Shown here one piece after another: positions 327 through 58,086 of a stretch of DNA of 64,000 nucleotides. The notes under the pieces are model-generated. The model did no database searches, was not told where the DNA came from, and worked only from the letters and a program-made list of their open reading frames with translations. Positions within the stretch are counted from its first letter, which is position 1. Each line of letters starts with the position of its first letter. The stretch covers positions 310,001-374,000 of the IMG/VR virus record IMGVR_UViG_3300029922_000001; one strand, 5' to 3'. The translations under genes and the position numbers were made by a program.

Positions 327-740
327 ATGGTTATAGCTTCGGTAGAACATAATTTTATTATACATTTCGTGAACTCAATGTGGTATGCTGTTTTTATGAT
401 CTTAACTGATATCGAAATTTATAGTTGTTGTATTTTTGGACAAAATTATACATTTATTGAACACTCCAAAAAGAATATTAAATTATGGAAACAACTTCTC
501 GTTGCTTTATCTGAAAGAAATATTCGTTTTGAAATTAATTCATCTGAAGGTAATGATAAATACAATGATGACTGTTATTGTTTTCTTAATGATTATAAAA
601 CTACAATTTATGTGTTAGATAATTACAGTATTTGCTATCCTTTGATGGATGGAGAATCATGTGATTGGGAAATCGGATCATTTAAGAAATTAATGAATTT
701 TATTGATAATTTTAAAGATCATCCAGCTAGAAAGATTTGA
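327..740 (+). CDS. hypothetical phage protein
   Basis: 137-aa ORF; true start uncertain. Confidence 0.5.
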   Translation: MVIASVEHNFIIHFVNSMWYAVFMILTDIEIYSCCIFGQNYTFIEHSKKNIKLWKQLLVALSERNIRFEINSSEGNDKYNDDCYCFLNDYKTTIYVLDNYSICYPLMDGESCDWEIGSFKKLMNFIDNFKDHPARKI

Positions 741-762
741 TCTAAGGTATACTGTTTTCATT

Positions 763-1899
763 ATGAAACGAATCGGAGAATTTCCACAAAAAGAAGAAGT
801 GCTTAAGCTATTGAGGACGACTGAAAAATCGCTTGTTTGTAAACTTGGTGTCGATCCTACAGCAACTGAGGTTACTTTGGGGTGGGCTGTCGTTTTACGC
901 GAACTAAAGCGTTTACAAGTGTGTGGTCACAGTATCACATTAATTATTGGCGATTTTACGGCTGGCATTGGTGATCCTACAGGTAAGAGCAAAACTCGTG
1001 TACCATTGACACACCAACAAATTAATGATAATGTCAATGCGTTATTACCACAGATTTTTACTATTTTAGATCCTACAAAGACTTCTGTTAAGTTTAATTC
1101 TGATTGGTTGGCTTGTAAGTCATTTGCTGAAATGATGCGTATTATGGCAAATATTACTGTTCAACAAGCTTTGAATCGTAATGACTTCCAGAATCGTTTA
1201 GAAGACAATGCACCCGTAGGATTACATGAAATTATGTACCCTGTTTGTCAGGCTTTGGATTCGGTACATATTTGGGCAGATATTGAAATTGGTGGAGAAG
1301 ATCAATTATTTAATGTTATGATGGGTAGAGATTTAATGAAGCAAATGGGTATGAAACCTCAGTTGCCGTTACTTTTCCCATTGCTTTTAGGTGTTGACGG
1401 TACGCATAAAATGAGCCAAAGTCTTGGTAATTTTATTAGTATTCGTGATACTCCTGAAGATATGTTTGGTAAAACGATGTCGATTCCAGATAGTGCTATG
1501 CCTAACTGGTTCCATTTGCTTACTGATATTTCTTTTGAGTCTGCACAGAAGGAAAATCCTAGAGATACTAAATTAATTTTGGCTGAAGAGATTGTACGTC
1601 AATTCCACGGATTTGAAGCAGCAACTTTGGCAAAAATTAATTTCATCAATAGGTTTACTCATAAGATTGTAATGCCTACTGAAATTCTGGGTTTTTCTAG
1701 AGAGGATGCAAATGAATCTTGGATGACAATTCTTGAAGAAGCTTTACCAGGAGAAAGCAAGAATAACCTTAAAAGATTGGTTCAACATAAGGGAGTGAGG
1801 TTGAACGGTACACCAATTGAGAGTGTGAAGGATTTCCCAGAGGAAGGGATTTTGACAATTGGGAAACTAAGAGCGTGGAAAGTAGAGAGTTACGATTAA
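763..1899 (+). CDS. tyrS: tyrosyl-tRNA synthetase (class I) with atypical HIGH motif
   Basis: LGVDPTA..TLGW (HIGH position), IGDFTAGIGDPTGKS.TR, YPVCQALDS, EIGGEDQLFN, GVDGTHKMSQSLGN (KMSKS-like), short S4-like tail; ATG at 763 follows AGGTATACT. Confidence 0.95.
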   Translation: MKRIGEFPQKEEVLKLLRTTEKSLVCKLGVDPTATEVTLGWAVVLRELKRLQVCGHSITLIIGDFTAGIGDPTGKSKTRVPLTHQQINDNVNALLPQIFTILDPTKTSVKFNSDWLACKSFAEMMRIMANITVQQALNRNDFQNRLEDNAPVGLHEIMYPVCQALDSVHIWADIEIGGEDQLFNVMMGRDLMKQMGMKPQLPLLFPLLLGVDGTHKMSQSLGNFISIRDTPEDMFGKTMSIPDSAMPNWFHLLTDISFESAQKENPRDTKLILAEEIVRQFHGFEAATLAKINFINRFTHKIVMPTEILGFSREDANESWMTILEEALPGESKNNLKRLVQHKGVRLNGTPIESVKDFPEEGILTIGKLRAWKVESYD

Positions 1900-26290: not shown

Positions 26291-27346
26291 ATGGCATGGT
26301 ATCGCAAAGCAAATACTGGGATTCAACAATTTCAAAATCCGAAGGAATTGTTAATGAACTATAGGCGAAAGGGTTCTGAAATGTTACCCGAATTGATAGA
26401 GTTCGTATCTAAACACTACGGAACTTCACCAGAAGAAGCTAAAAATATAATTTCTGAAAAAACTTTACCTATAGAAGTTATTCAGCAATTTATGAAATAT
26501 ATGCACCATGTTGAACATCCTCTATTGAAGCCTTCATACAATAGTCAACAATATTCAGATATTGCTGGTGCTTATTTAAATACTAGACGTTCCAAAAATG
26601 AAATGCAAGCATATATCTTGTTAGGTTTACCAGGTTCTGGTAAATCTACATATGCTGATGCTGCTGGATTGATTGATCCTAATAAAATTGGAGGATTAGA
26701 AATAGATGTTGATTTATTTAAACCATATAGCCATAAATATTCTCAAGGATATGGATCTTCTTTAGCTCATCCTGATAGTATGGCTTTAGGTGATGTTGCA
26801 CTTACCCAAGCGGCTAATAAAGGTAGTAATTTAGTTTTACCACTAGTTGGAGCTAACGCTAATTATATTGAAGGTGTTATTCATCATTTAAAGAAATTAG
26901 GCTACAACGTTCATATTAAATATTTACATTTAGATCACAATAATGCTGTAAACAGAGCAAAAGAAAGATATGAAACAACAAAGCGTTATGTACCATTAGA
27001 GTATATTAGTGGTATTGCAAATCAGCCTTTTGAAACTTATAATAAGATGAAAAATTTAAACAATGCGGATTCTTTTGAAGATTTGAATGCGCTTGATGTT
27101 GCAAAACAAAGACCACACAGACGACAGAATGAAATATATGAATCAGATACACCATTGTTTGTGACGGCACAAGTGGAAAACAATAGAGATAAAAAAGATA
27201 ACAATGAAGTAATTTTAGAATATCCCTTTAATGAATTTGAGGAATGGGAAGAAACAGTATTAAACTCTTTAAAAAATGCACATCAATTGCTGGAATTTAA
27301 AAAGAGATATCCATACATGCTTCCCTCTAAAGATATGAAGAACTAA
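26291..27346 (+). CDS. zeta-toxin-like P-loop kinase with WY leader
   Basis: MAWYRKA; LLGLPGSGKST, IDVDLFK, LKKLGYNV, RAKERYETTKRYVP. Confidence 0.8.
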   Translation: MAWYRKANTGIQQFQNPKELLMNYRRKGSEMLPELIEFVSKHYGTSPEEAKNIISEKTLPIEVIQQFMKYMHHVEHPLLKPSYNSQQYSDIAGAYLNTRRSKNEMQAYILLGLPGSGKSTYADAAGLIDPNKIGGLEIDVDLFKPYSHKYSQGYGSSLAHPDSMALGDVALTQAANKGSNLVLPLVGANANYIEGVIHHLKKLGYNVHIKYLHLDHNNAVNRAKERYETTKRYVPLEYISGIANQPFETYNKMKNLNNADSFEDLNALDVAKQRPHRRQNEIYESDTPLFVTAQVENNRDKKDNNEVILEYPFNEFEEWEETVLNSLKNAHQLLEFKKRYPYMLPSKDMKN

Positions 27347-42277: not shown

Positions 42278-42497
42278 ACAAATTTGTATTCCTAGAAAGC
42301 GAAGGTGGAGTAAAAACTACGACACCCATCATAATTACGTTGCAATATATGACACACAACATAAAAGTTACATACCAGATGGTATGAAATTTCAAAATTT
42401 TTCTACTGAAAACATTATGGCTATGAAAACAAAAGAAGATAAAAGCACATATGTTCATTCTATATGTACTCATTGTGGTAATATAATTAAAAGATAA
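42270..42497 (+). CDS. zinc-ribbon hypothetical protein
   Basis: C...H...CTHCG. Confidence 0.6.
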   Translation: MNEQICIPRKRRWSKNYDTHHNYVAIYDTQHKSYIPDGMKFQNFSTENIMAMKTKEDKSTYVHSICTHCGNIIKR

Positions 42498-43210
42498 TGA
42501 TCATTTTTGCGATACTTGCTGCTATAGCAACAATATTGGGTGGACTATTTAGTTTGAGGTTTTCAGACTATAGGCATATTATTCGTGCATTTAGTGCAGG
42601 AGCGGTAATTGGTGTCTGTTTGTTTGATCTACTTAAAGAAGCACTAGTGTCCACCCAAGGGCATTACGATTTCAGTACTGTTTTATTAGTGATGGCATTT
42701 GGTTTTGGAATTTACTTTACTATAAGTAACTGGATTAGTTTGACTTCACACAGTAATGATGAATGTAAAAACAAAAAACACAAAACCATTCTCGGAGCAG
42801 GTAGTTTATCACTTCATAGTGTTCTTGATGGCGTTGCTTTAGGTTTGACATTTCATGTTTCACCAATATTGGGTCTTGCAATGGCATGTGGTATTATCTC
42901 ACATGATTTTTCTGATGGTATCAATACAACCAATATGGTGATTAAAAATGGTGGTTCCTTTAAGGAAGCTTTACACTGGTTGTTTATAGATGCATTAGCT
43001 CCAATTGTTGGTGTTATTCTTACTTTGTTCATTGTGTTATCTGCACATGTTATGGGATTGGTTTTAGCTTGTTTTGCAGGATTCTTTCTCTATATTGGTG
43101 CATCTGATTTAATCCCTGAGTGTCACCATGAACATCCTAAGTACTTAACAAGTATTATGTTTTTTGTTGGTTTACTCTTTATGTGGGTTGTAATTCACTT
43201 CGCAGGTTAG
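42497..43210 (+). CDS. ZIP-family (ZupT-like) metal transporter
   Basis: multiple TM segments; AFSAG, LHSVLDGVALG, HDFSDG, AGFFLYIGASDLIPE.H. Confidence 0.9.
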   Translation: MIIFAILAAIATILGGLFSLRFSDYRHIIRAFSAGAVIGVCLFDLLKEALVSTQGHYDFSTVLLVMAFGFGIYFTISNWISLTSHSNDECKNKKHKTILGAGSLSLHSVLDGVALGLTFHVSPILGLAMACGIISHDFSDGINTTNMVIKNGGSFKEALHWLFIDALAPIVGVILTLFIVLSAHVMGLVLACFAGFFLYIGASDLIPECHHEHPKYLTSIMFFVGLLFMWVVIHFAG

Positions 43211-43441: not shown

Positions 43442-43601
43442 GGAAGTCGATCACTCTTTTGATGATGATTTCTATCAAAAATACGTAACACCACAAACTA
43501 GAACAATTCGAACTCATACTACGTAATGGTAATACAATGTATCAGATAATACTATTCGAAAATGGATAAAAGCTTATCAAAGTGAGGTATAATTAAAGCA
43601 T

Positions 43602-43672
43602 GTCTTAGAAGCATTTTGGTGATGCAAGGGACTCTAAATCCCTATAACGGAGTTCGAATCTCCGCTAAGACG
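43602..43672 (+). tRNA. amber suppressor tRNA (anticodon CTA)
   Basis: GTCTTAG-AA-GCAT(TTTGGTG)ATGC-A-AGGGA(CTCTAAA)TCCCT-ATAA-CGGAG(TTCGAAT)CTCCG-CTAAGAC-G; no encoded CCA. Confidence 0.9.
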
Positions 43673-43682
43673 CGAGAAAAAT

Positions 43683-43850
43683 ATGAAAAAACTCACAAAA
43701 AAAGAAAATGCTATTTTTGATGCAGCATGGGATGAAGGCTATGAAGCCTATCATAAAGCTGTGTTACGTGAAAATAATCCTCATATTGTTTTAGTGGCAA
43801 ATGATGGTTGGGATGAAGGTTGGGAAATTGCATGGGAAGATGATCAATAA
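43683..43850 (+). CDS. Rmf-like miniprotein (55 aa)
   Basis: WDEGYEAY...NNPH...GWDEGW..AW. Confidence 0.55.
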   Translation: MKKLTKKENAIFDAAWDEGYEAYHKAVLRENNPHIVLVANDGWDEGWEIAWEDDQ

Positions 43851-43867
43851 GGTGTATAATAACGATA

Positions 43868-44095
43868 ATGAAGAAAATGAAGAAAATTCAAGCTAAATAT
43901 GTTACCGTGTGGGATAGTGGACTAAGGATTTCTGCAAACTGTGAAATTGATATTTCAGTAAGACCAGTGCGCTTAATGAGCGTAGAATCAGTTTATAATC
44001 CAGATATTCAAGCTGGTAATATTATTGAAGAATATATTACACACCACGAATATGATCCAGAATATGTTCCAGTATATAGGGAATGGGAAGTTTAA
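43868..44095 (+). CDS. hypothetical protein
   Basis: Y.TVWDSG motif. Confidence 0.65.
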   Translation: MKKMKKIQAKYVTVWDSGLRISANCEIDISVRPVRLMSVESVYNPDIQAGNIIEEYITHHEYDPEYVPVYREWEV

Positions 44096-44133: not shown

Positions 44134-44367
44134 ATGAAGAATTATTATAGCTCTGAAAAAATCAACGAAAGAATTAATGAAAGAACTAAGATTTATGATT
44201 TGCTTGCAGAAGTAATTGGAAAACCTAGTTTTCTTAATGAATTGCAAAAAAGATATCCCAATGTTGATTGGAACCAAGTACAATATGATGATGGTCAAAC
44301 TAGTTTAATGCACGTTCAGAATGATATTGAACATTTAAATATTGACGCGACAATTTACTACCCATAA
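44134..44367 (+). CDS. hypothetical protein
   Basis: class II promoter. Confidence 0.7.
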   Translation: MKNYYSSEKINERINERTKIYDLLAEVIGKPSFLNELQKRYPNVDWNQVQYDDGQTSLMHVQNDIEHLNIDATIYYP

Positions 44368-44368
44368 T

Positions 44369-44989
44369 ATGCTATATACATTTGATAAAGAATACACATT
44401 CTCCATTACAGACGCTGAAATCAAGCGTTGTGAAGAATTCGCAGATGCTTCTACAAACGACTATTGGAAGCGCAACCAAACTGATTCAGATCGAATCAAA
44501 CAACAGATTGTTTTCGGAAAACTAGGAGAGCTAGTTGCCGCTAAGTTCCTTGTACGACATTTGAAACAACCTGTTATGGAACCAGACTTCCGCATTTACA
44601 CTAGAGATACCAAAAGTTGGGATGCGGACTTCCCCTATAAGTCATTAGGACTTGGAAATAAGAATTTCCATGTTAAGGCTTATGCTCCAAGTGATAAACC
44701 AGAATCATGGGCATTTCAATTTAAGAACAAGAGTGGCAACGGTGGAACCGATAAGCTATTTGAGAACTTCCCAGAACATAAGAAGGATTGTGTTATCTGT
44801 GTTTTGGTTGATGTAGATAATAAAAAGGGCTACATCAGAGTATTGGCTAATTGGGGAGACTTGCATTATCTTCTACGTGATCCAATATCTTATCAATTGA
44901 GAGGATTGAAGAAGTTCCTTTATTATGAGGACCTTATCAATCTCAAGAACGAAGAAAAAGATAGTGAAAAATCTGATTCAGAAGCTTGA
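44369..44989 (+). CDS. conserved phage protein, possible PD-(D/E)XK fold
   Basis: GKLGELVA, PDF.IY, WDADF, HVKA. Confidence 0.6.
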   Translation: MLYTFDKEYTFSITDAEIKRCEEFADASTNDYWKRNQTDSDRIKQQIVFGKLGELVAAKFLVRHLKQPVMEPDFRIYTRDTKSWDADFPYKSLGLGNKNFHVKAYAPSDKPESWAFQFKNKSGNGGTDKLFENFPEHKKDCVICVLVDVDNKKGYIRVLANWGDLHYLLRDPISYQLRGLKKFLYYEDLINLKNEEKDSEKSDSEA

Positions 44990-45014
44990 CAAAGACTAGG
45001 AAGATGGGTATAAT
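44986..45014 (+). promoter_or_regulatory. consensus sigma70 promoter
   Basis: TTGACA-17-TATAAT. Confidence 0.85.
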
Positions 45015-45019
45015 GAATA

Positions 45020-45590
45020 CGTTGCAGGGTTGAGAGACTGTAGCTGGAGCCTCCTAAAAAGGTTTGGTTGGATTCCTTGTAAAAATCCAACATGAAACCG
45101 AGAGGAATGACCCATAACTTAGCAGACCTCTTTCTAGCGGGGGTTCTCGAAAAAGCTAGAAACCGAGGGGCTGTTCGATTTCAGCGATTGTAACCTTTCT
45201 TAGTAGGATTCTCGAAAACTAAGAACCGAGAAGGTGTATTAATGGCTTCTTTCCTGGTAGAAGTTCTCGAAAAACTAGGAACCGAGAGTTGATTTTAAGT
45301 TCAATCATTGCCTTGCTTGTTGGGTTCTCGAAAAAACAAGCTCCTTCCGAGATAGATCGTCTAACGATCACGCAGAAAAATAGTGGGGTGTTCTCGGACT
45401 CCAGGTACCAACTATGAAGTATGAAGTAAAGTAAACGAAAAATAATTGTCCCATGAGATTGGGTTGACCAACTCCGCAAGTTTAAGCGACTGATTAACTA
45501 TGCGTAAAAGTAAAAAGTGCAAATATTATAAATGGCGTAAGTAGTTTATTTTGCGAATTTTCCTCAGAAATGAGGGAAAACGAGAAAATA
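45020..45590 (+). ncRNA. ncRNA locus C with repeated TTCTCGAAA-loop hairpins or pseudoknots
   Basis: four units near 45128-45170, 45193-45235, 45245-45290 and 45312-45352, plus a fifth GTTCTCG loop near 45390; no credible ORF. Confidence 0.7.
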
Positions 45591-45607
45591 TGATGGTATA
45601 ATAAGTT

Positions 45608-46636
45608 ATACAAAAGAACATTGAAAATTGAATATGAGCCGCGCTCAATAAATATCGGAAAAGAACGGTAAAATTGAAGTTTAGTAAATTTAAATCCGTC
45701 ACCTAATCAGGTAAAAACATGAAAGTAAATAGATAATACGGAAATCATTAACTGCTTAGTCAGTTACTATCATTAAGGGGAAAGAAAGAATAAGATAGTC
45801 CACCGACGCGATACATATTAAAGTAGGGTACGAAATAGAAATATGAACGTATCTTGGAATTAATTTTCCAACGAGATTTGTTGAAAAACAAAATAGGGAT
45901 GGGATAGACCGAATAAACGCTTTTGGAGTCTGCAACAGTAGTTGTGACGATGAATTAAGAAGTTAGAAATAATAGTTCACTGGGCACCCATGCGAATTAA
46001 GGATGTCAAGATCGGGAAGGTGGCAAACTTCCCTTGCGAGATGTTAGAAATACTATAAAAGTACACCAACTTAGTTGTGGAAAATTAATTAATTCTAGCA
46101 CTCCGAGATTTATTAGGTGGCAAAACCGCAATATTTATAAGTTGCGTACCTAGCTGTAGGGTGATAGCCTATCCGTTTTTATAGGGTAAACATACAGTCT
46201 AATGAATCTCTAAATTGAAAACTGAATATGGAATAACACTCGCTCTAGAGCTATCGGCTTTTAAACAACCTGGTGCCAAAATAAAGTAACGGCTATAACT
46301 ATATAGTTAGTTTTCGAATTATAGTGAAAGGAATTAATATTCCTAACGAGATTTATATGATCGCAGATTCCGCTTGCAAACATAGTTGGTTTCGGGAGCG
46401 ACGTTAATGGGTATATCCCACGAGATTTTTACAGACTGTTTGATTGGATTATCTAACAAAACATAAAGAACATCAACACTAAACCGCAAAAGAAAGAGTC
46501 ATGTACTACCATGAACGCTTTTGCATTTTTACCATTCTGTTATTTGTTTGTAAGAATCTTCTGGAGCAATTGTAGTAGTTGCTTGGTTATTGTATCCCTT
46601 TCATTTCAATTTGCCCTACCCACAAGGTGGGGCAAA
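45608..46636 (+). ncRNA. large (~1 kb) ncRNA locus D
   Basis: own TGGTATAAT (-10 near 45597), boxA-like elements at 45616 and 46214, many hairpins, five hairpin-CGAGA ends, terminal hairpin 46610-46636. Confidence 0.65.
46610..46636 (+). terminator. terminator-like hairpin
   Basis: TTTGCCCTACC-CACAA-GGTGGGGCAAA. Confidence 0.6.
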
Positions 46637-46945: not shown

Positions 46946-47389
46946 ATGGGAAATCTAAATCTAAAAACATCAGACACACCTGAAAAGCAAATGGAAGCTT
47001 CTGGTTGTTTGACTCTAATCTTTTGTCTATGCCTTACACCGTTCGTTTGGTATTACATGACAATGTACAACGCTTATGTTTTTGCTGACATCTGGAATTG
47101 GTTCATGCCTGTTCTCTTTGGCGTAAAAGCAATTACTATGTGGCACGCTGCCGCTATCGGTTCACTCTCTGGATTTATCACTTCCGGTCTTTATGTGTTG
47201 CACGTTAGTACTCAACAGGAATTTAATAAGATTAAGAAGGCTTTGAATATTCCTGATGAACAATTGCTTACAGGATGGGATGTTCTTGGGCATTTCGTTA
47301 AACTTTGGGGTATTGGTATTATGGTTATCACTGTTATGTGGTTCTTTGCCTATGTCGTCAATGTGTTCTTCTTCACGAAGGGCGGTTAA
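46946..47389 (+). CDS. hypothetical membrane protein
   Basis: 3-4 TM segments; WNWFMP.LFG. Confidence 0.7.
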   Translation: MGNLNLKTSDTPEKQMEASGCLTLIFCLCLTPFVWYYMTMYNAYVFADIWNWFMPVLFGVKAITMWHAAAIGSLSGFITSGLYVLHVSTQQEFNKIKKALNIPDEQLLTGWDVLGHFVKLWGIGIMVITVMWFFAYVVNVFFFTKGG

Positions 47390-47848: not shown

Positions 47849-48448
47849 ATGCTTATAGATCCAGATCATATTACAAACTACAATCGCACAGAAAAAGAAC
47901 TTCAGTGTTTTCTATTATTTGCTATTATGGTTGCTGGTAAAAAAGCTAAAATGATGGCACCTAAATTAGATCATTTTCTTTTCATAAATGATCAGCTAAT
48001 GCCATTTGAATTCATTCAGAAGTTGATGAATAATGATGTACTTTATGGTGCTTTATTGCATTCTAAAATCGGTAAGTATAAGTTATTATTACAGTCTTTG
48101 CCTCAATTAGTGAATAGTGGCTTAGATTTGCATACGTGTACGATAGAGGATTTGGAAAAGATTAAAGGTATTGGTCCTAAATCGTCTAGATTTTTTATAT
48201 TACACTCACGCCCTAATCAAAGGATTGCGGCACTTGATACGCATATTTTGAAATTTATTAAAGAGAATTTAGACCCCAAAGCACCTAAGCAAACCCCAAG
48301 CGGAAAACGATATTTGCAGTTAGAAAAACTTTTTGTTGAATATTGTGAACAAAATAATCTCTGCATAGCAGATTTTGACCTTCAGCTTTGGGTAAAATAT
48401 TCATCAGAGAACGATAAAAAAAGGAAAGGAAAGAAAAAAAATGTTTGA
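47849..48448 (+). CDS. helix-hairpin-helix DNA glycosylase-like protein (Ogg-like)
   Basis: LEKIKGIGPKSSRFF, AALDTHILKF, Y..LE..F, DFDLQLW. Confidence 0.75.
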   Translation: MLIDPDHITNYNRTEKELQCFLLFAIMVAGKKAKMMAPKLDHFLFINDQLMPFEFIQKLMNNDVLYGALLHSKIGKYKLLLQSLPQLVNSGLDLHTCTIEDLEKIKGIGPKSSRFFILHSRPNQRIAALDTHILKFIKENLDPKAPKQTPSGKRYLQLEKLFVEYCEQNNLCIADFDLQLWVKYSSENDKKRKGKKKNV

Positions 48449-49485: not shown

Positions 49486-49643
49486 GAGAATTATATATTA
49501 AACACAAAGGAATATATCTAATCATGTGTTAACTATATATTATGAGATGTGAAGGCTATCGTGGTTCTTTTGATAAATTTTTAGAAGCTTATGGCGATCT
49601 TGATAAATTTCCCCAATGCCTCAATTAGAGGTATACTCGAATC

Positions 49644-55117: not shown

Positions 55118-55390
55118 ATGGATAAAACACTACAAAATAAAATTAATGGATGGGCATTAAGCTGGCTTAAAAAGAATCATTCGTATCATTGGGAATATTC
55201 TAAAACGGCAAATTATGATGTTTCTGTTGAGCATCAAGACGAACATCATTATTCAGAATATACCGTAGATCCTGGTTATACCCGAATTATGTTAAAAAAT
55301 GATGATGGTCAAGTTTGGATGATTCAAGATATTTACGATAGTAATTATTCATTGAACAATCTTCTGATGGAGATTTTTGCTTATATCTAG
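55118..55390 (+). CDS. hypothetical protein (duplicate of 55971)
   Basis: MDKTLQNKIN.WAL.WLKKNHSYHWEYSKTANYD nearly identical in both. Confidence 0.75.
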   Translation: MDKTLQNKINGWALSWLKKNHSYHWEYSKTANYDVSVEHQDEHHYSEYTVDPGYTRIMLKNDDGQVWMIQDIYDSNYSLNNLLMEIFAYI

Positions 55391-55970: not shown

Positions 55971-56246
55971 ATGGATAAAACACTACAAAATAAAATTAAT
56001 AGATGGGCACTTAATTGGCTCAAAAAGAATCATTCATATCATTGGGAATATTCTAAAACAGCTAATTATGATATTGTTATTGAACATCAAGACGAACATT
56101 ATTATTCAGAATACACCGTAGATCCTGGTTATTCCAGAATAACATTAAAGAATGATGTTGGAAACAATTGGATCATTACTGATATATCTGATGGTAGCGA
56201 ATATTCATTACATGATCTTTTGATGGAAATTTTTTCTTATATCTAA
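55971..56246 (+). CDS. hypothetical protein (duplicate of 55118)
   Basis: see 55118. Confidence 0.75.
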   Translation: MDKTLQNKINRWALNWLKKNHSYHWEYSKTANYDIVIEHQDEHYYSEYTVDPGYSRITLKNDVGNNWIITDISDGSEYSLHDLLMEIFSYI

Positions 56247-56925: not shown

Positions 56926-58086
56926 ATGGAAGAATTTACAGAAGAAATTAATGAAACATCTAGAAAATTAGCTAGTATTCAAAGGATTTTAGCCTTGGAA
57001 CCAATTCCAGGTGCGGATCGTATTGAAACAGCTACAATTTTGGGATGGAAGGTCGTAGTAGAAAAAGGAAAGTATAGAGTTGGGCAATTAGTTGTATACG
57101 CTGAAATCGACAGTTTATTCCCTGCTAGACCTGAATATGAATTTCTTTCTAAGACTGGTTATCGTATCAAAACCATTCGATTAAAACAGCAGGTAAGCCA
57201 AGGCATTGTATTTCCATTGTCAGTTTTAAAGTGGAATGATAACATCAAAATTATTGGTGACGAAGTGTTGGATGATAATTATGATTACATTAATGATATG
57301 TGGAATGAAGAATCGCCTTTGCTATTACTTCAAGATATGAATAATGATTCAAATCCTGCTATTTTTCTTGCTGAAGGAACTGATGTTACTGAATGGATTG
57401 GTGTAACCAAATATGAACCAGTTGTACCTGCACAATTACGGGGAGTAGCTAGAGGTGGTTTTCCAAGTTGGTTGCATAAGACGGATGAATGTCGGATTCA
57501 GGCTATTCCTGATTTATTAGAAAGACACATTGGTACAACGATTAGAGGACACGAAAAGCTCGACGGCAGTAGTTGTACTATGTATATTCGCAATGGTGAT
57601 TTTGGAGTATGTTCTAGAAATTTGAATTTAAAGCACACTGAAGGTAATAGTTTCTGGGAAATAGCTATGAAGTTCCAAGTTGAAGCCATGATGAAACATT
57701 GTTTCCCAGATTATAATTTTGCAATCCAAGGCGAACTAATCGGTCCTGGCATTCAAGGTAACAAATATAATCTTAGAGAAACAACGATTAGATTGTTTAA
57801 TGTGTTTGATATTGATAAAGATGAATACTTGCATGATCTTGAATCAAAGTATGTTGCTCAACAATTAGGTTTAGAGTGGTGTCCTTGGGTGATGGATTAT
57901 GTTATTACTGAAAACACCACAGTTGAAGAACTATTGTTGTTAGCGCAAGGTCCATCGGCTTTAAATCCTAACCAGGAAAGAGAGGGGTTGGTTTGGCGAC
58001 CATTAGTTGAGTCTAAAGATGATAAAATCGGAAGATTTTCCTTTAAGACTATTTCTAATAAGTTCTTGCTAAAAAACGGAGAGTAA
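56926..58086 (+). CDS. ATP-dependent RNA ligase, DRB0094 family
   Basis: N-terminal OB LASIQRI..LEPIPGADRIE; KTDECRIQ, HEKLDGSS, VCSRN, QGELIGPGIQGN.Y, REGLV, SFKTISNKFLLK. Confidence 0.92.
   Translation: MEEFTEEINETSRKLASIQRILALEPIPGADRIETATILGWKVVVEKGKYRVGQLVVYAEIDSLFPARPEYEFLSKTGYRIKTIRLKQQVSQGIVFPLSVLKWNDNIKIIGDEVLDDNYDYINDMWNEESPLLLLQDMNNDSNPAIFLAEGTDVTEWIGVTKYEPVVPAQLRGVARGGFPSWLHKTDECRIQAIPDLLERHIGTTIRGHEKLDGSSCTMYIRNGDFGVCSRNLNLKHTEGNSFWEIAMKFQVEAMMKHCFPDYNFAIQGELIGPGIQGNKYNLRETTIRLFNVFDIDKDEYLHDLESKYVAQQLGLEWCPWVMDYVITENTTVEELLLLAQGPSALNPNQEREGLVWRPLVESKDDKIGRFSFKTISNKFLLKNGE

What the first reader, a model, noticed from the sequence alone, without database searches (positions are those of the whole stretch)
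43602..43677. Amber suppressor tRNA in a genome that still stops at TAG
Seen: a clean tRNA with anticodon CTA, G73, short variable loop and its own -10 box giving a 1-2 nt leader. TAG is still a real stop here: 55390 ends in TAG where its duplicate 56246 ends in TAA, and long genes read through without TAG. Known: CUCUAAA is the Tyr loop CUGUAAA with one change, but G73 fits Gln better than Tyr (A73). Inference: conditional readthrough of host or late phage TAG stops, or an early stage of recoding. A pairing with the phage TyrRS is testable.
Basis: partly seen in the sequence, partly recalled or inferred. Interest (0 to 1): 0.7.

Follow-up and report, generated by a model that had tools for sequence, protein, structure and literature searches.

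The report
Conserved amber suppressor tRNA in jumbo phage
A 441-kb phage from peat carries a real, evolutionarily conserved tRNA that reads the stop codon TAG, although the phage itself still ends about a tenth of its genes with TAG; such cases are known in a few other large phages and remain unexplained.

Summary
Window 43602-43672 is a tRNA with anticodon CTA, G73 and a 4-nt variable loop. A TATAAT box lies 8 nt upstream.

The tRNA is under selection. A distant relative (L069) has a tRNA-CTA at the syntenic place. Eight of 21 stem pairs differ on both sides there, while CTA, G73 and the first three acceptor pairs are kept.

TAG is a true stop. It ends 60 of 579 ORFs. The ZIP gene just upstream ends at TAG at full homologue length. 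Orthologues and paralogues swap TAG and TAA at the same position. No gene has an in-frame TAG, and the genome has no release factor.

- a second, Lys-like tRNA-CTA (genome 172128-172200);
- a phage LysRS;
- a block of 75-95 core genes without any TAG stop.

Pairing with the phage TyrRS is unlikely. "Early stage of recoding" fits poorly with conservation in a distant relative.

Best reading: a functional amber suppressor giving partial readthrough. The inserted residue is unresolved (Glu/Gln-like acceptor end; Lys possible). This is a new member of a known but unexplained kind (XacN1, Acinetobacter T4-like phages).

The parts
43583..43593 (+). Promoter-like extended -10 box TGAGGTATAAT, without the CCCCAA upstream element
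   Evidence: Sequence. The same GTATAAT/GTATACT box sits 4-9 nt before ATG at more than 200 genes. The orthologous tRNA pair in L069 is also preceded by GGTATAAT. The generic sigma-70 scan finds no -35/-10 pair on this strand.
43600..43601 (+). Predicted 0-2 nt 5' leader (AT); inferred, not measured
   Evidence: In the leaderless gene design of this genome the A of ATG lies 7 nt after the -10 box. Here that position is A43600, 2 nt before G1. ATG TCT TAG at 43600-43608 is a two-codon mini-frame overlapping the tRNA 5' end.
43602..43672 (+). tRNA with anticodon CUA (amber suppressor type), from G1 to discriminator G73
   Evidence: Orthologue L069:1756-1828 has 8 of 21 stem pairs changed on both sides and 97.6% of cells paired.
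43634..43636 (+). Anticodon CTA within loop CTCTAAA
   Evidence: CTA is identical in the orthologue, whose loop is TTCTAAA.
43673..43677 (+). 3' trailer CGAGA; no CCA is encoded
   Evidence: 23 of 24 tRNAs of the genome are followed by C(C)(AC)GAGA. The L069 orthologue is also followed by CGAGAA.
43683..43850 (+). 55-aa ORF starting 10 nt after the tRNA, with no -10 box of its own; probably co-transcribed with the tRNA
   Evidence: Weak Pfam RMF match (PF04957, 21.3 bits, below the 27.9 cut-off). The gene at this place in L069 is not homologous.
42497..43210 (+). ZIP metal transporter gene ending in TAG immediately upstream of the tRNA
   Evidence: The Pfam Zip match runs to profile position 321 of 323 at residue 231 of 237. 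Homologues are 236-246 aa at about 100% coverage. The stop is followed by GGTATACT-N7-ATG of the next gene.
703..1899 (+). Phage TyrRS, bacterial type
   Evidence: TIGR00234 at 271 bits, PF00579 at 207 bits, weak S4 domain.
55118..55390 (+). 90-aa paralogue ending in TAG
   Evidence: 79% identical to the copy at 55971-56246 and ends at the same residue.
55971..56246 (+). 91-aa paralogue ending in TAA

Best explanation
The feature is a functional tRNA gene with anticodon CUA that the phage lineage has kept under selection.

It is transcribed from its own -10-only promoter. That gives a 0-2 nt leader, probably on one transcript with the small ORF behind it. It is then trimmed at the CGAGA trailer like every other tRNA of this phage, and the host completes its CCA end.

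Once charged, it competes with release factor 1 at UAG and gives partial readthrough. The phage uses the standard code and keeps TAG as a real stop.

The charging enzyme is most likely not the phage TyrRS. It is either a host enzyme of the Glu/Gln type, as the acceptor end suggests, or a lysyl-tRNA synthetase, host or phage. From my own knowledge of the E. coli suppressor literature, LysRS and GlnRS are the usual mischargers of CUA tRNAs.

Shown: the gene, its structure, its conservation, its promoter and trailer context, and the status of TAG as a stop. Inferred: transcription start, processing, charging, and the level and purpose of readthrough.

The purpose is open. The phage tolerates the suppressor because its core genes avoid TAG stops. 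The selective benefit may be buffering of amber mutations, extended protein isoforms, or disturbance of host termination.
For: It is a real tRNA.

It is an orthologue under purifying selection. L069 has a tRNA-CTA directly upstream of homologues of window genes 43868-44095, 44134-44367, 44342-44989, 46946-47389 and 47849-48448. Eight of 21 stem pairs changed on both sides and one pair is lost. CTA, G73, G1-C72/U2-A71/C3-G70, A8-A9 and the 4-nt variable loop are kept.

Its promoter and trailer are shared with the rest of the genome's genes and tRNAs.

The genome uses the standard code. ORFs of at least 60 aa cover 92% of it, and reading TAG as sense gives no specific gain. Every long in-frame continuation after a TAG runs into a next gene that has its own -10 box and ATG.

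A second suppressor of different origin lies beside the tRNA-Lys genes, and the phage has a LysRS.

TAG stops are absent from 75 consecutive genes at 116-227 kb (permutation p = 0.008). The run is 95 genes (p = 0.0008) without one dubious ORF.

There are precedents in standard-code phages: XacN1 (PMC5852040) and Acinetobacter phages.
Against: There is no expression, aminoacylation or readthrough data. Only DNA runs hold the phage.

TAG-terminated genes show no back-up stops. The median in-frame extension is 10.5 codons after TAG against 6 after TAA or TGA. Either suppression is weak or extensions are harmless.

A8, U14 and G21 depart from the usual tertiary-pair nucleotides.

Only one orthologue was found, so conservation rests on two sequences.

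The TAG-free block could simply reflect a preference for TAA in highly expressed core genes. TGA is also lower there (10 of 95 against 84 of 484, not significant).

The identity of the inserted residue is unresolved.
Confidence: 0.6

Rival explanations
1. Stage on the way to TAG recoding, or a timed code switch. The suppressor is switched on so that late genes containing in-frame TAG are read, as proposed for code-15 phages.
For: The genome has low GC (33.9%), TAA dominates, and TAG is the rarest stop. There are two suppressors. Borges et al. describe suppressor tRNAs in standard-code relatives as a precursor state. The core block has no TAG stops.
Against: No in-frame TAG was found in any gene. 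ORFs of up to 3178 aa are open under code 11. Reading TAG as sense gains no more coverage than reading TGA as sense. All TAG-joined ORF pairs have a promoter and ATG between them. No RF2 or RF1 gene is present. The same state occurs in a distant relative, so it is stable rather than transitional. TAG still ends about 10% of ORFs, including the gene next to the tRNA.
Confidence: 0.1
2. A weapon or takeover tool. The suppressor acts mainly on host (or competitor) messages that end in UAG, damaging host proteins or altering their C-termini. The phage's essential genes escape because they avoid TAG.
For: Core phage genes avoid TAG stops. The tRNA lies among small genes with individual promoters, a layout typical of takeover regions. 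The window also holds a polynucleotide-kinase-like gene and an RNA ligase, and the genome holds LysRS, TyrRS and a tmRNA. Together these show heavy investment in the translation conflict.
Against: The host is unknown. ZIP homologues point to Patescibacteria and LysRS homologues to Armatimonadota, both at only about 45-50% identity. Many accessory phage genes, including neighbours of the tRNA, end in TAG. There is no direct evidence.
Confidence: 0.15
3. The tRNA is not an active decoder. It is a tRNA-like RNA kept for another role (decoy for a tRNA-targeting defence, primer, regulatory RNA) or is not aminoacylated.
For: It has unusual A8, U14 and G21. No close isotype relative was found. TAG-ending genes show no back-up stops.
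Against: The exact CUA anticodon, U33, A37, the GG of the D loop, the TTCGA T loop and G73 are all conserved while the stems covary. That is the pattern expected of a decoding tRNA. Other tRNAs of this phage also have A8.
Confidence: 0.1
4. Tyrosine-inserting suppressor charged by the phage TyrRS.
For: TyrRS is encoded 42 kb upstream in the same window. The loop CUCUAAA is one change from the Tyr loop.
Against: The TyrRS is the bacterial type. The phage's own tRNA-Tyr genes are 81 and 84 nt long, with long variable arms and A73. This tRNA has a 4-nt variable loop and G73, in both orthologues.
Confidence: 0.03

Closest known systems
The two CUA suppressor tRNA genes of Xanthomonas jumbo phage XacN1 (Yoshikawa et al. 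2018, PMC5852040)
   Same: It is a large standard-code phage with many tRNAs and two tRNA-CUA genes. In-silico readthrough of its amber stops revealed no hidden coding sequence. The same negative result was obtained here.
   Different: No sequence relationship was detected. Here the two suppressors are of different origin, one sits among tRNA-Lys genes next to a phage LysRS system, and one is shown to be conserved with covariation in a distant relative.
Suppressor tRNAs of TAG-recoded (code 15) phages such as crAss-like and Lak phages, and of their standard-code relatives (Borges et al., bioRxiv 10.1101/2021.08.26.457843)
   Same: A phage-encoded tRNA-CUA in a low-GC genome where TAA dominates. 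Standard-code relatives with suppressors are reported there as a possible precursor state.
   Different: Here there are no in-frame TAG codons and no RF2, TAG still ends about 10% of ORFs, and the state is shared with a distant relative. The environment is peat and lake water, not gut.
tRNA-CTA genes annotated as tRNA-Pyl or tRNA-TERM in Acinetobacter T4-like phages (for example Maestro, MT949699)
   Same: Cultured standard-code phages with a lone tRNA-CUA among small early-region genes. The anticodon loop CTCTAAA and the T arm CGGAG-TTCGAAT-CTCCG are identical, and the variable loop has 4 nt.
   Different: The acceptor stem and D arm are unrelated, and the Maestro tRNA has A73 and an encoded CCA. 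The shared parts are generic, so homology is not shown.
Laboratory amber suppressors of E. coli (supE, su7 and the synthetic CUA series); my own knowledge, not tested here
   Same: A single anticodon change turns a sense tRNA into a UAG reader. CUA tRNAs are commonly charged by GlnRS or LysRS whatever their origin.
   Different: Those are recent mutants of host genes. This one is an old, phage-borne gene with no detectable sense-anticodon parent.

Membership tests
Elongator tRNA (Rfam RF00005) | Cloverleaf with 7/4/5/5-bp stems that scores above the family threshold | tested here: met
   54.6 bits against 29; ARAGORN call; the minimum-energy fold is the cloverleaf.
Elongator tRNA (Rfam RF00005) | Base pairs maintained by compensatory change in relatives | tested here: met
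   8 of 21 pairs changed on both sides against L069; 97.6% paired against 38-48% for slid controls. Only two sequences.
Elongator tRNA (Rfam RF00005) | Conserved tertiary nucleotides U8, A14, A21, G18G19, U33, T-loop TTCRA | tested here: inconclusive
   G18G19, U33 and TTCGA are present. A8, U14 and G21 replace U8, A14 and A21 in both orthologues. Other tRNAs of this phage also have A8.
Amber suppressor tRNA | Anticodon CUA in a 7-nt loop with U33 and a purine at 37 | tested here: met
   Loop CTCTAAA; the orthologue has TTCTAAA.
Amber suppressor tRNA | Is aminoacylated and inserts a residue at UAG | not testable with these tools
   No RNA run holds the phage.
tRNA-Pyl / pyrrolysine system (ARAGORN's label) | PylRS (and pylBCD) encoded alongside | tested here: not met
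   TIGR02367 gives only a 20.7-bit hit (cut-off 178), and that hit is the class II core of a LysRS.
tRNA-Pyl / pyrrolysine system (ARAGORN's label) | 3-nt variable loop, 6-bp anticodon stem, one base between acceptor and D stems, small D loop without GG (my own knowledge of tRNA-Pyl) | tested here: not met
   4-nt variable loop, 5-bp anticodon stem, two bases (AA) at positions 8-9, and a D loop containing GG.
Bacterial tRNA-Tyr (partner of the phage TyrRS) | Long variable arm and A73 | tested here: not met
   4-nt variable loop and G73. The phage's own tRNA-Tyr genes have both defining features.
Bacterial tRNA-Gln (E. coli GlnRS identity set; my own knowledge) | U1-A72, G2-C71, G3-C70, G73, G10, U35 | tested here: inconclusive
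   G73, G10 and U35 are present. The first three pairs are G-C, U-A and C-G, unlike E. coli glnV. Pattern hits to the anticodon and T arms were all archaeal or eukaryotic-type tRNA-Gln, but the similarity stops at the pattern.
Proteobacterial-type tRNA-Glu (E. coli GluRS identity set; my own knowledge) | G1-C72, U2-A71, missing residue 47, U35, C36, A37, U11-A24, U13-G22 | tested here: inconclusive
   G1-C72, U2-A71 (plus C3-G70 and G73), the 4-nt variable loop, U35 and A37 match E. coli gltU. C36, U11-A24 and U13-G22 do not.
TAG-recoded (code 15) phage | In-frame TAG codons in conserved genes; coding density rises when TAG is read as sense | tested here: not met
TAG-recoded (code 15) phage | Phage release factor 2 (present in some such phages) | tested here: not met
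   PF00472 finds nothing in the 441-kb record.

The most novel reading that the evidence does not exclude
This phage lineage deliberately keeps TAG leaky as a stable, selected state. It carries two suppressors of different origin. At least one of them (the Lys-like one, perhaps both) is charged by the phage's own LysRS. Core genes are purged of TAG stops. In the accessory region, TAG stops that sit directly after the CCCCAA promoter element are by geometry in frame with the next gene. Suppression would therefore yield extended or fused isoforms on demand, or would be turned against host termination.
Probability: 0.15. Interest if true: 0.75.

Novelty: new member of a known kind. Interest (0 to 1): 0.45.

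Why it matters
Suppressor tRNAs in phages are usually read either as the tool of a recoded genome or as a step towards one.

Here the suppressor has been kept, with compensatory changes in its stems, across phages that have diverged to 32-63% protein identity. Both phages still terminate genes at TAG. That argues that amber suppression can be a lasting trait of a standard-code phage.

It also gives a concrete pair of genes to test: two tRNA-CUA genes and a phage LysRS. Experiments could show what residue is inserted, how much readthrough occurs, and who pays for it, the host or the phage.

The practical point for annotation is that a tRNA-CUA alone is not evidence for code 15.

Tried and rejected
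Searches for close homologues
- Megablast of the region against phage records found nothing.
- blastn of the tRNA against phages gave only partial matches of mixed isotype. Against E. coli genomes it gave none.

Pattern scans
- Anticodon arm plus T arm with a free anticodon hit only one giant-virus tRNA-Gln and two Heimdallarchaeota tRNA-Gln. The similarity is confined to the pattern.
- The acceptor-stem pattern gave four non-tRNA hits.
- The D-arm 18-mer found tRNAs of several isotypes in unrelated phages: His in L005, a short Leu-TAA in L027/L039 and another CTA in L042. They share no proteins with this genome, so the D arm says nothing about identity.

Searches for related loci
- The search for related loci with ZIP, TyrRS, topoisomerase II and an alignment of the 215-aa neighbour found nothing.
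- The 61%-identical ZIP contig L006 is not syntenic and has no tRNA.
- The 199-aa neighbour belongs to a large, widespread family and did not lead to more relatives.

Sequencing runs
- Reads and contigs from eight runs gave either the identical phage, without variants, or fragments that miss the tRNA. No RNA run holds the phage.

Other
- The pyrrolysine reading was rejected.
- The host could not be settled from ZIP or LysRS homologues.
- A permissive ARAGORN run was too noisy to use.

Full report
WHAT THE WINDOW IS. The window is bases 310001-374000 of a 441,498-bp virus record. Its GC content is 33.9%. It occurs in many peat metagenomes and a few lake-water ones; all holding runs are DNA, none RNA. 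It has no near relative among deposited phages.

THE OBSERVATION.
- ARAGORN finds a tRNA with anticodon cta at 43602-43673.
- Rfam's tRNA model scores 54.6 bits against a threshold of 29.
- The minimum-energy fold is the cloverleaf, -25.5 kcal/mol, z = -3.6 against shuffles.
- Read from the sequence: GTCTTAG AA GCAT TTTGGTG ATGC A AGGGA CTCTAAA TCCCT ATAA CGGAG TTCGAAT CTCCG CTAAGAC G.
- The discriminator G73 is at 43672 and the variable loop has 4 nt. No CCA is encoded.
- The tRNA departs from the usual pattern at three tertiary positions (A8, U14, G21).

PROMOTER AND PROCESSING CONTEXT. TGAGGTATAAT lies at 43583-43593, and G1 follows the TATAAT by 8 nt. This is not a chance box.
- GTATAAT or GTATACT followed 4-9 nt later by ATG precedes 123 genes across the genome.
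- A further 93 sites carry CCCCAA-N13-GGTATACT and are nearly all followed by ATG about 6 nt on. All 93 lie at 341-441 kb, 92 of them on the + strand.
- The phage therefore seems to make mostly leaderless messages.
- tRNA-Arg (genome 413604) has the same 8-nt spacing behind a full CCCCAA promoter.
- Of the 24 tRNAs called in the genome, 23 are followed by C(C)(AC)GAGA, and this one is among them.
- It is therefore handled like the phage's other tRNAs.
- A 55-aa ORF starts 10 nt behind it without a -10 box of its own. It is probably on the same transcript.

TAG IS A STOP.
- In a non-overlapping set of 579 ORFs covering 92% of the genome, TAA, TGA and TAG end 425, 94 and 60.
- Reading TAG as sense raises ORF coverage no more than reading TGA as sense does.
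- ORFs of up to 3178 aa are open under the standard code.
- The ZIP transporter gene just upstream (42497-43210) ends at TAG. The Pfam profile is matched to its end, and homologues are 236-246 aa at full coverage.
- In a close relative (L066, 75-100% protein identity) two orthologous stops are swapped between TAG and TAA.
- Nine TAG-ended ORFs continue in frame for 50 codons or more. One overlaps the tRNA cluster at about 7.9 kb and has no coding signal. Each of the other eight runs through a -10 box and the ATG of the next gene.
- The recurrent 'CCCCAA TAG' cases are in frame with the next ATG only because the promoter geometry fixes 27 nt between them.
- There is no release factor gene.

THE TRNA IS CONSERVED.
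- The 215-aa neighbour (44342-44989) has only three homologues in 5.8 billion proteins.
- One of them lies on a 6.8-kb contig, L069. That contig carries homologues of five window genes downstream of the tRNA, in the same order and at 32-63% identity.
- Just upstream of them L069 has tRNA-Leu(CAA) followed by a tRNA-CTA, behind a GGTATAAT box and followed by CGAGAA.
- Against the window tRNA, 8 of 21 stem pairs differ on both sides and one pair is lost, with 97.6% of cells paired. Slid controls give 38-48%.
- Unchanged are the anticodon CTA, U33, A37-A38, G73, the first three acceptor pairs, A8-A9, most of the D arm, and the 4-nt length of the variable loop.
- L069 has 45% GC and also ends the 192-aa homologue with TAG.
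- This is the pattern of a decoding tRNA kept for a long time in phages that still stop at TAG.

- The genome has a second tRNA-CTA at 172128-172200. It lies between tRNA-Lys(TTT) and tRNA-Lys(CTT), is 71-73% identical to them, and has A73.
- The genome encodes a class II LysRS at 264815-266290 (NF001756, 474 bits) as well as the TyrRS. GlnRS/GluRS (PF00749), class IIa synthetases (PF00587) and a CCA-adding enzyme (PF01743) are absent.
- TAG stops are unevenly spread. A run of 75 consecutive genes at 116-227 kb has none (permutation p = 0.008). The run is 95 genes (p = 0.0008) if one ORF without coding signal is dropped.
- That block holds the very large genes and replication genes, and the second suppressor.

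WHICH AMINO ACID. This stays open.
- The phage TyrRS is the bacterial type, and the phage's own tRNA-Tyr genes have long variable arms and A73. Tyrosine is therefore unlikely.
- The ARAGORN label 'Pyl' is only a reading of the anticodon. There is no PylRS, and the shape is wrong.
- Among E. coli tRNAs with G73, only tRNA-Glu shares the acceptor end (GTC...GAC-G; GTCC...GGAC-G in L069) and the 4-nt variable loop. GAG to TAG is one change.
- The anticodon arm resembles archaeal and eukaryotic tRNA-Gln, but only within the searched pattern.
- From my own knowledge of the E. coli suppressor literature, CUA tRNAs are often charged by GlnRS or LysRS whatever their origin. Gln and Lys, including charging by the phage LysRS, therefore remain candidates.

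COMPARISON AND VERDICT.
- Amber suppressor tRNAs in standard-code phages are on record. XacN1 has two, and its authors likewise found nothing behind its amber stops.
- Acinetobacter T4-like phages carry one.
- Borges et al. treat such cases as precursors of recoding.
- This is a further member of that kind.
- It adds covariation evidence for long-term maintenance, two suppressors of different origin, a LysRS that could serve one of them, and a TAG-free core.
- The recoding reading and the TyrRS pairing are not supported. The purpose of the suppression is not known.

Noticed in passing
genome 172128-172200 (outside the window; L073:629-701): A second tRNA-CTA with A73. It lies between tRNA-Lys(TTT) and tRNA-Lys(CTT) and is 71-73% identical to them, so it is probably a Lys-derived amber suppressor.
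   Followed up: partly
genome 264815-266290 (L014:745-2220): A phage class II lysyl-tRNA synthetase (NF001756, 474 bits). A close relative has a copy that is 75% identical in the same gene order.
   Followed up: partly
window 31579 to 63491 and on to genome 441472; for example window 44100, 47396, 49611, 55396, 56252: 93 copies of CCCCAA-N13-GGTATACT, nearly all followed by ATG about 6 nt on, 92 on the + strand and only at genome 341-441 kb. A further 123 genes elsewhere have GTATAAT or GTATACT 4-9 nt before ATG. This points to a genome-wide leaderless-message design with two promoter classes.
   Followed up: partly
all tRNA genes of the genome; window 43673-43677 and 49486-49490: 23 of 24 tRNAs are followed by C(C)(AC)GAGA plus an A/T-rich spacer, and the base before G1 is mostly T. 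This looks like a phage-wide tRNA 3' processing signal. The motif is under-represented in the genome as a whole: 133 CGAGA(A/T) sites against about 310 expected.
   Followed up: partly
window 44990-46510: A 1.5-kb stretch closed in all six frames by all three stop codons. It holds four or five imperfect repeats of about 60 nt at 45130-45334. There is no Rfam match. The relative L069 has a similar 1.1-kb gene-free gap at the same place.
   Followed up: partly
window 43683-43850: A 55-aa ORF directly behind the tRNA with a weak match to ribosome modulation factor (PF04957, 21.3 bits, below the cut-off). It is notable in a phage that seems to use leaderless messages, but the gene is not conserved at this place in L069.
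   Followed up: no
genome 116032-226989: 75 consecutive ORFs without a TAG stop (permutation p = 0.008), or 95 from about 90 kb if one dubious ORF is dropped (p = 0.0008). TGA is still used there, 10 times.
   Followed up: yes
genome 172212-172284, 275383-275484, 7460-7529: Rfam finds tRNA genes that ARAGORN misses (45, 38.6 and 35.8 bits). The first has a CTT loop and a D arm, AAGCAT..ATGCA, like that of the window suppressor.
   Followed up: partly
genome 172713-172810 and 389592-389681: tRNA-Gln(TTG) carries an insert of about 25 nt in the anticodon region. A 90-nt 'tRNA-Ser(ACT)' is the only tRNA without the GAGA trailer.
   Followed up: no
window 26291-27346 and 56926-58086; genome 293574-293927: A polynucleotide-kinase-like ATPase and an RNA ligase (phrog_968, 247 bits), which together form a tRNA-repair pair of the T4 kind. 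The genome also has a phage tmRNA.
   Followed up: no
window 42497-43210: A ZIP metal transporter gene in a phage. The named cellular homologues, at about 50% identity, are from Patescibacteria. LysRS homologues point instead to Armatimonadota. The host is unresolved.
   Followed up: partly
whole record: Proteins identical to two of this phage's are also listed on a contig of 521,591 bp. The 441,498-bp record may therefore not be the full genome, or the other assembly includes repeats.
   Followed up: no
L042:368-441, L027:2818-2890, L005:1102-1173: Unrelated metagenomic or viral contigs carry tRNAs with the identical D arm AAGCATTTTGGTGATGCA but other anticodons: CTA, a short-armed TAA, and GTG. 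This unusual A8/U14 D arm recurs across phage tRNAs of different isotypes.
   Followed up: partly
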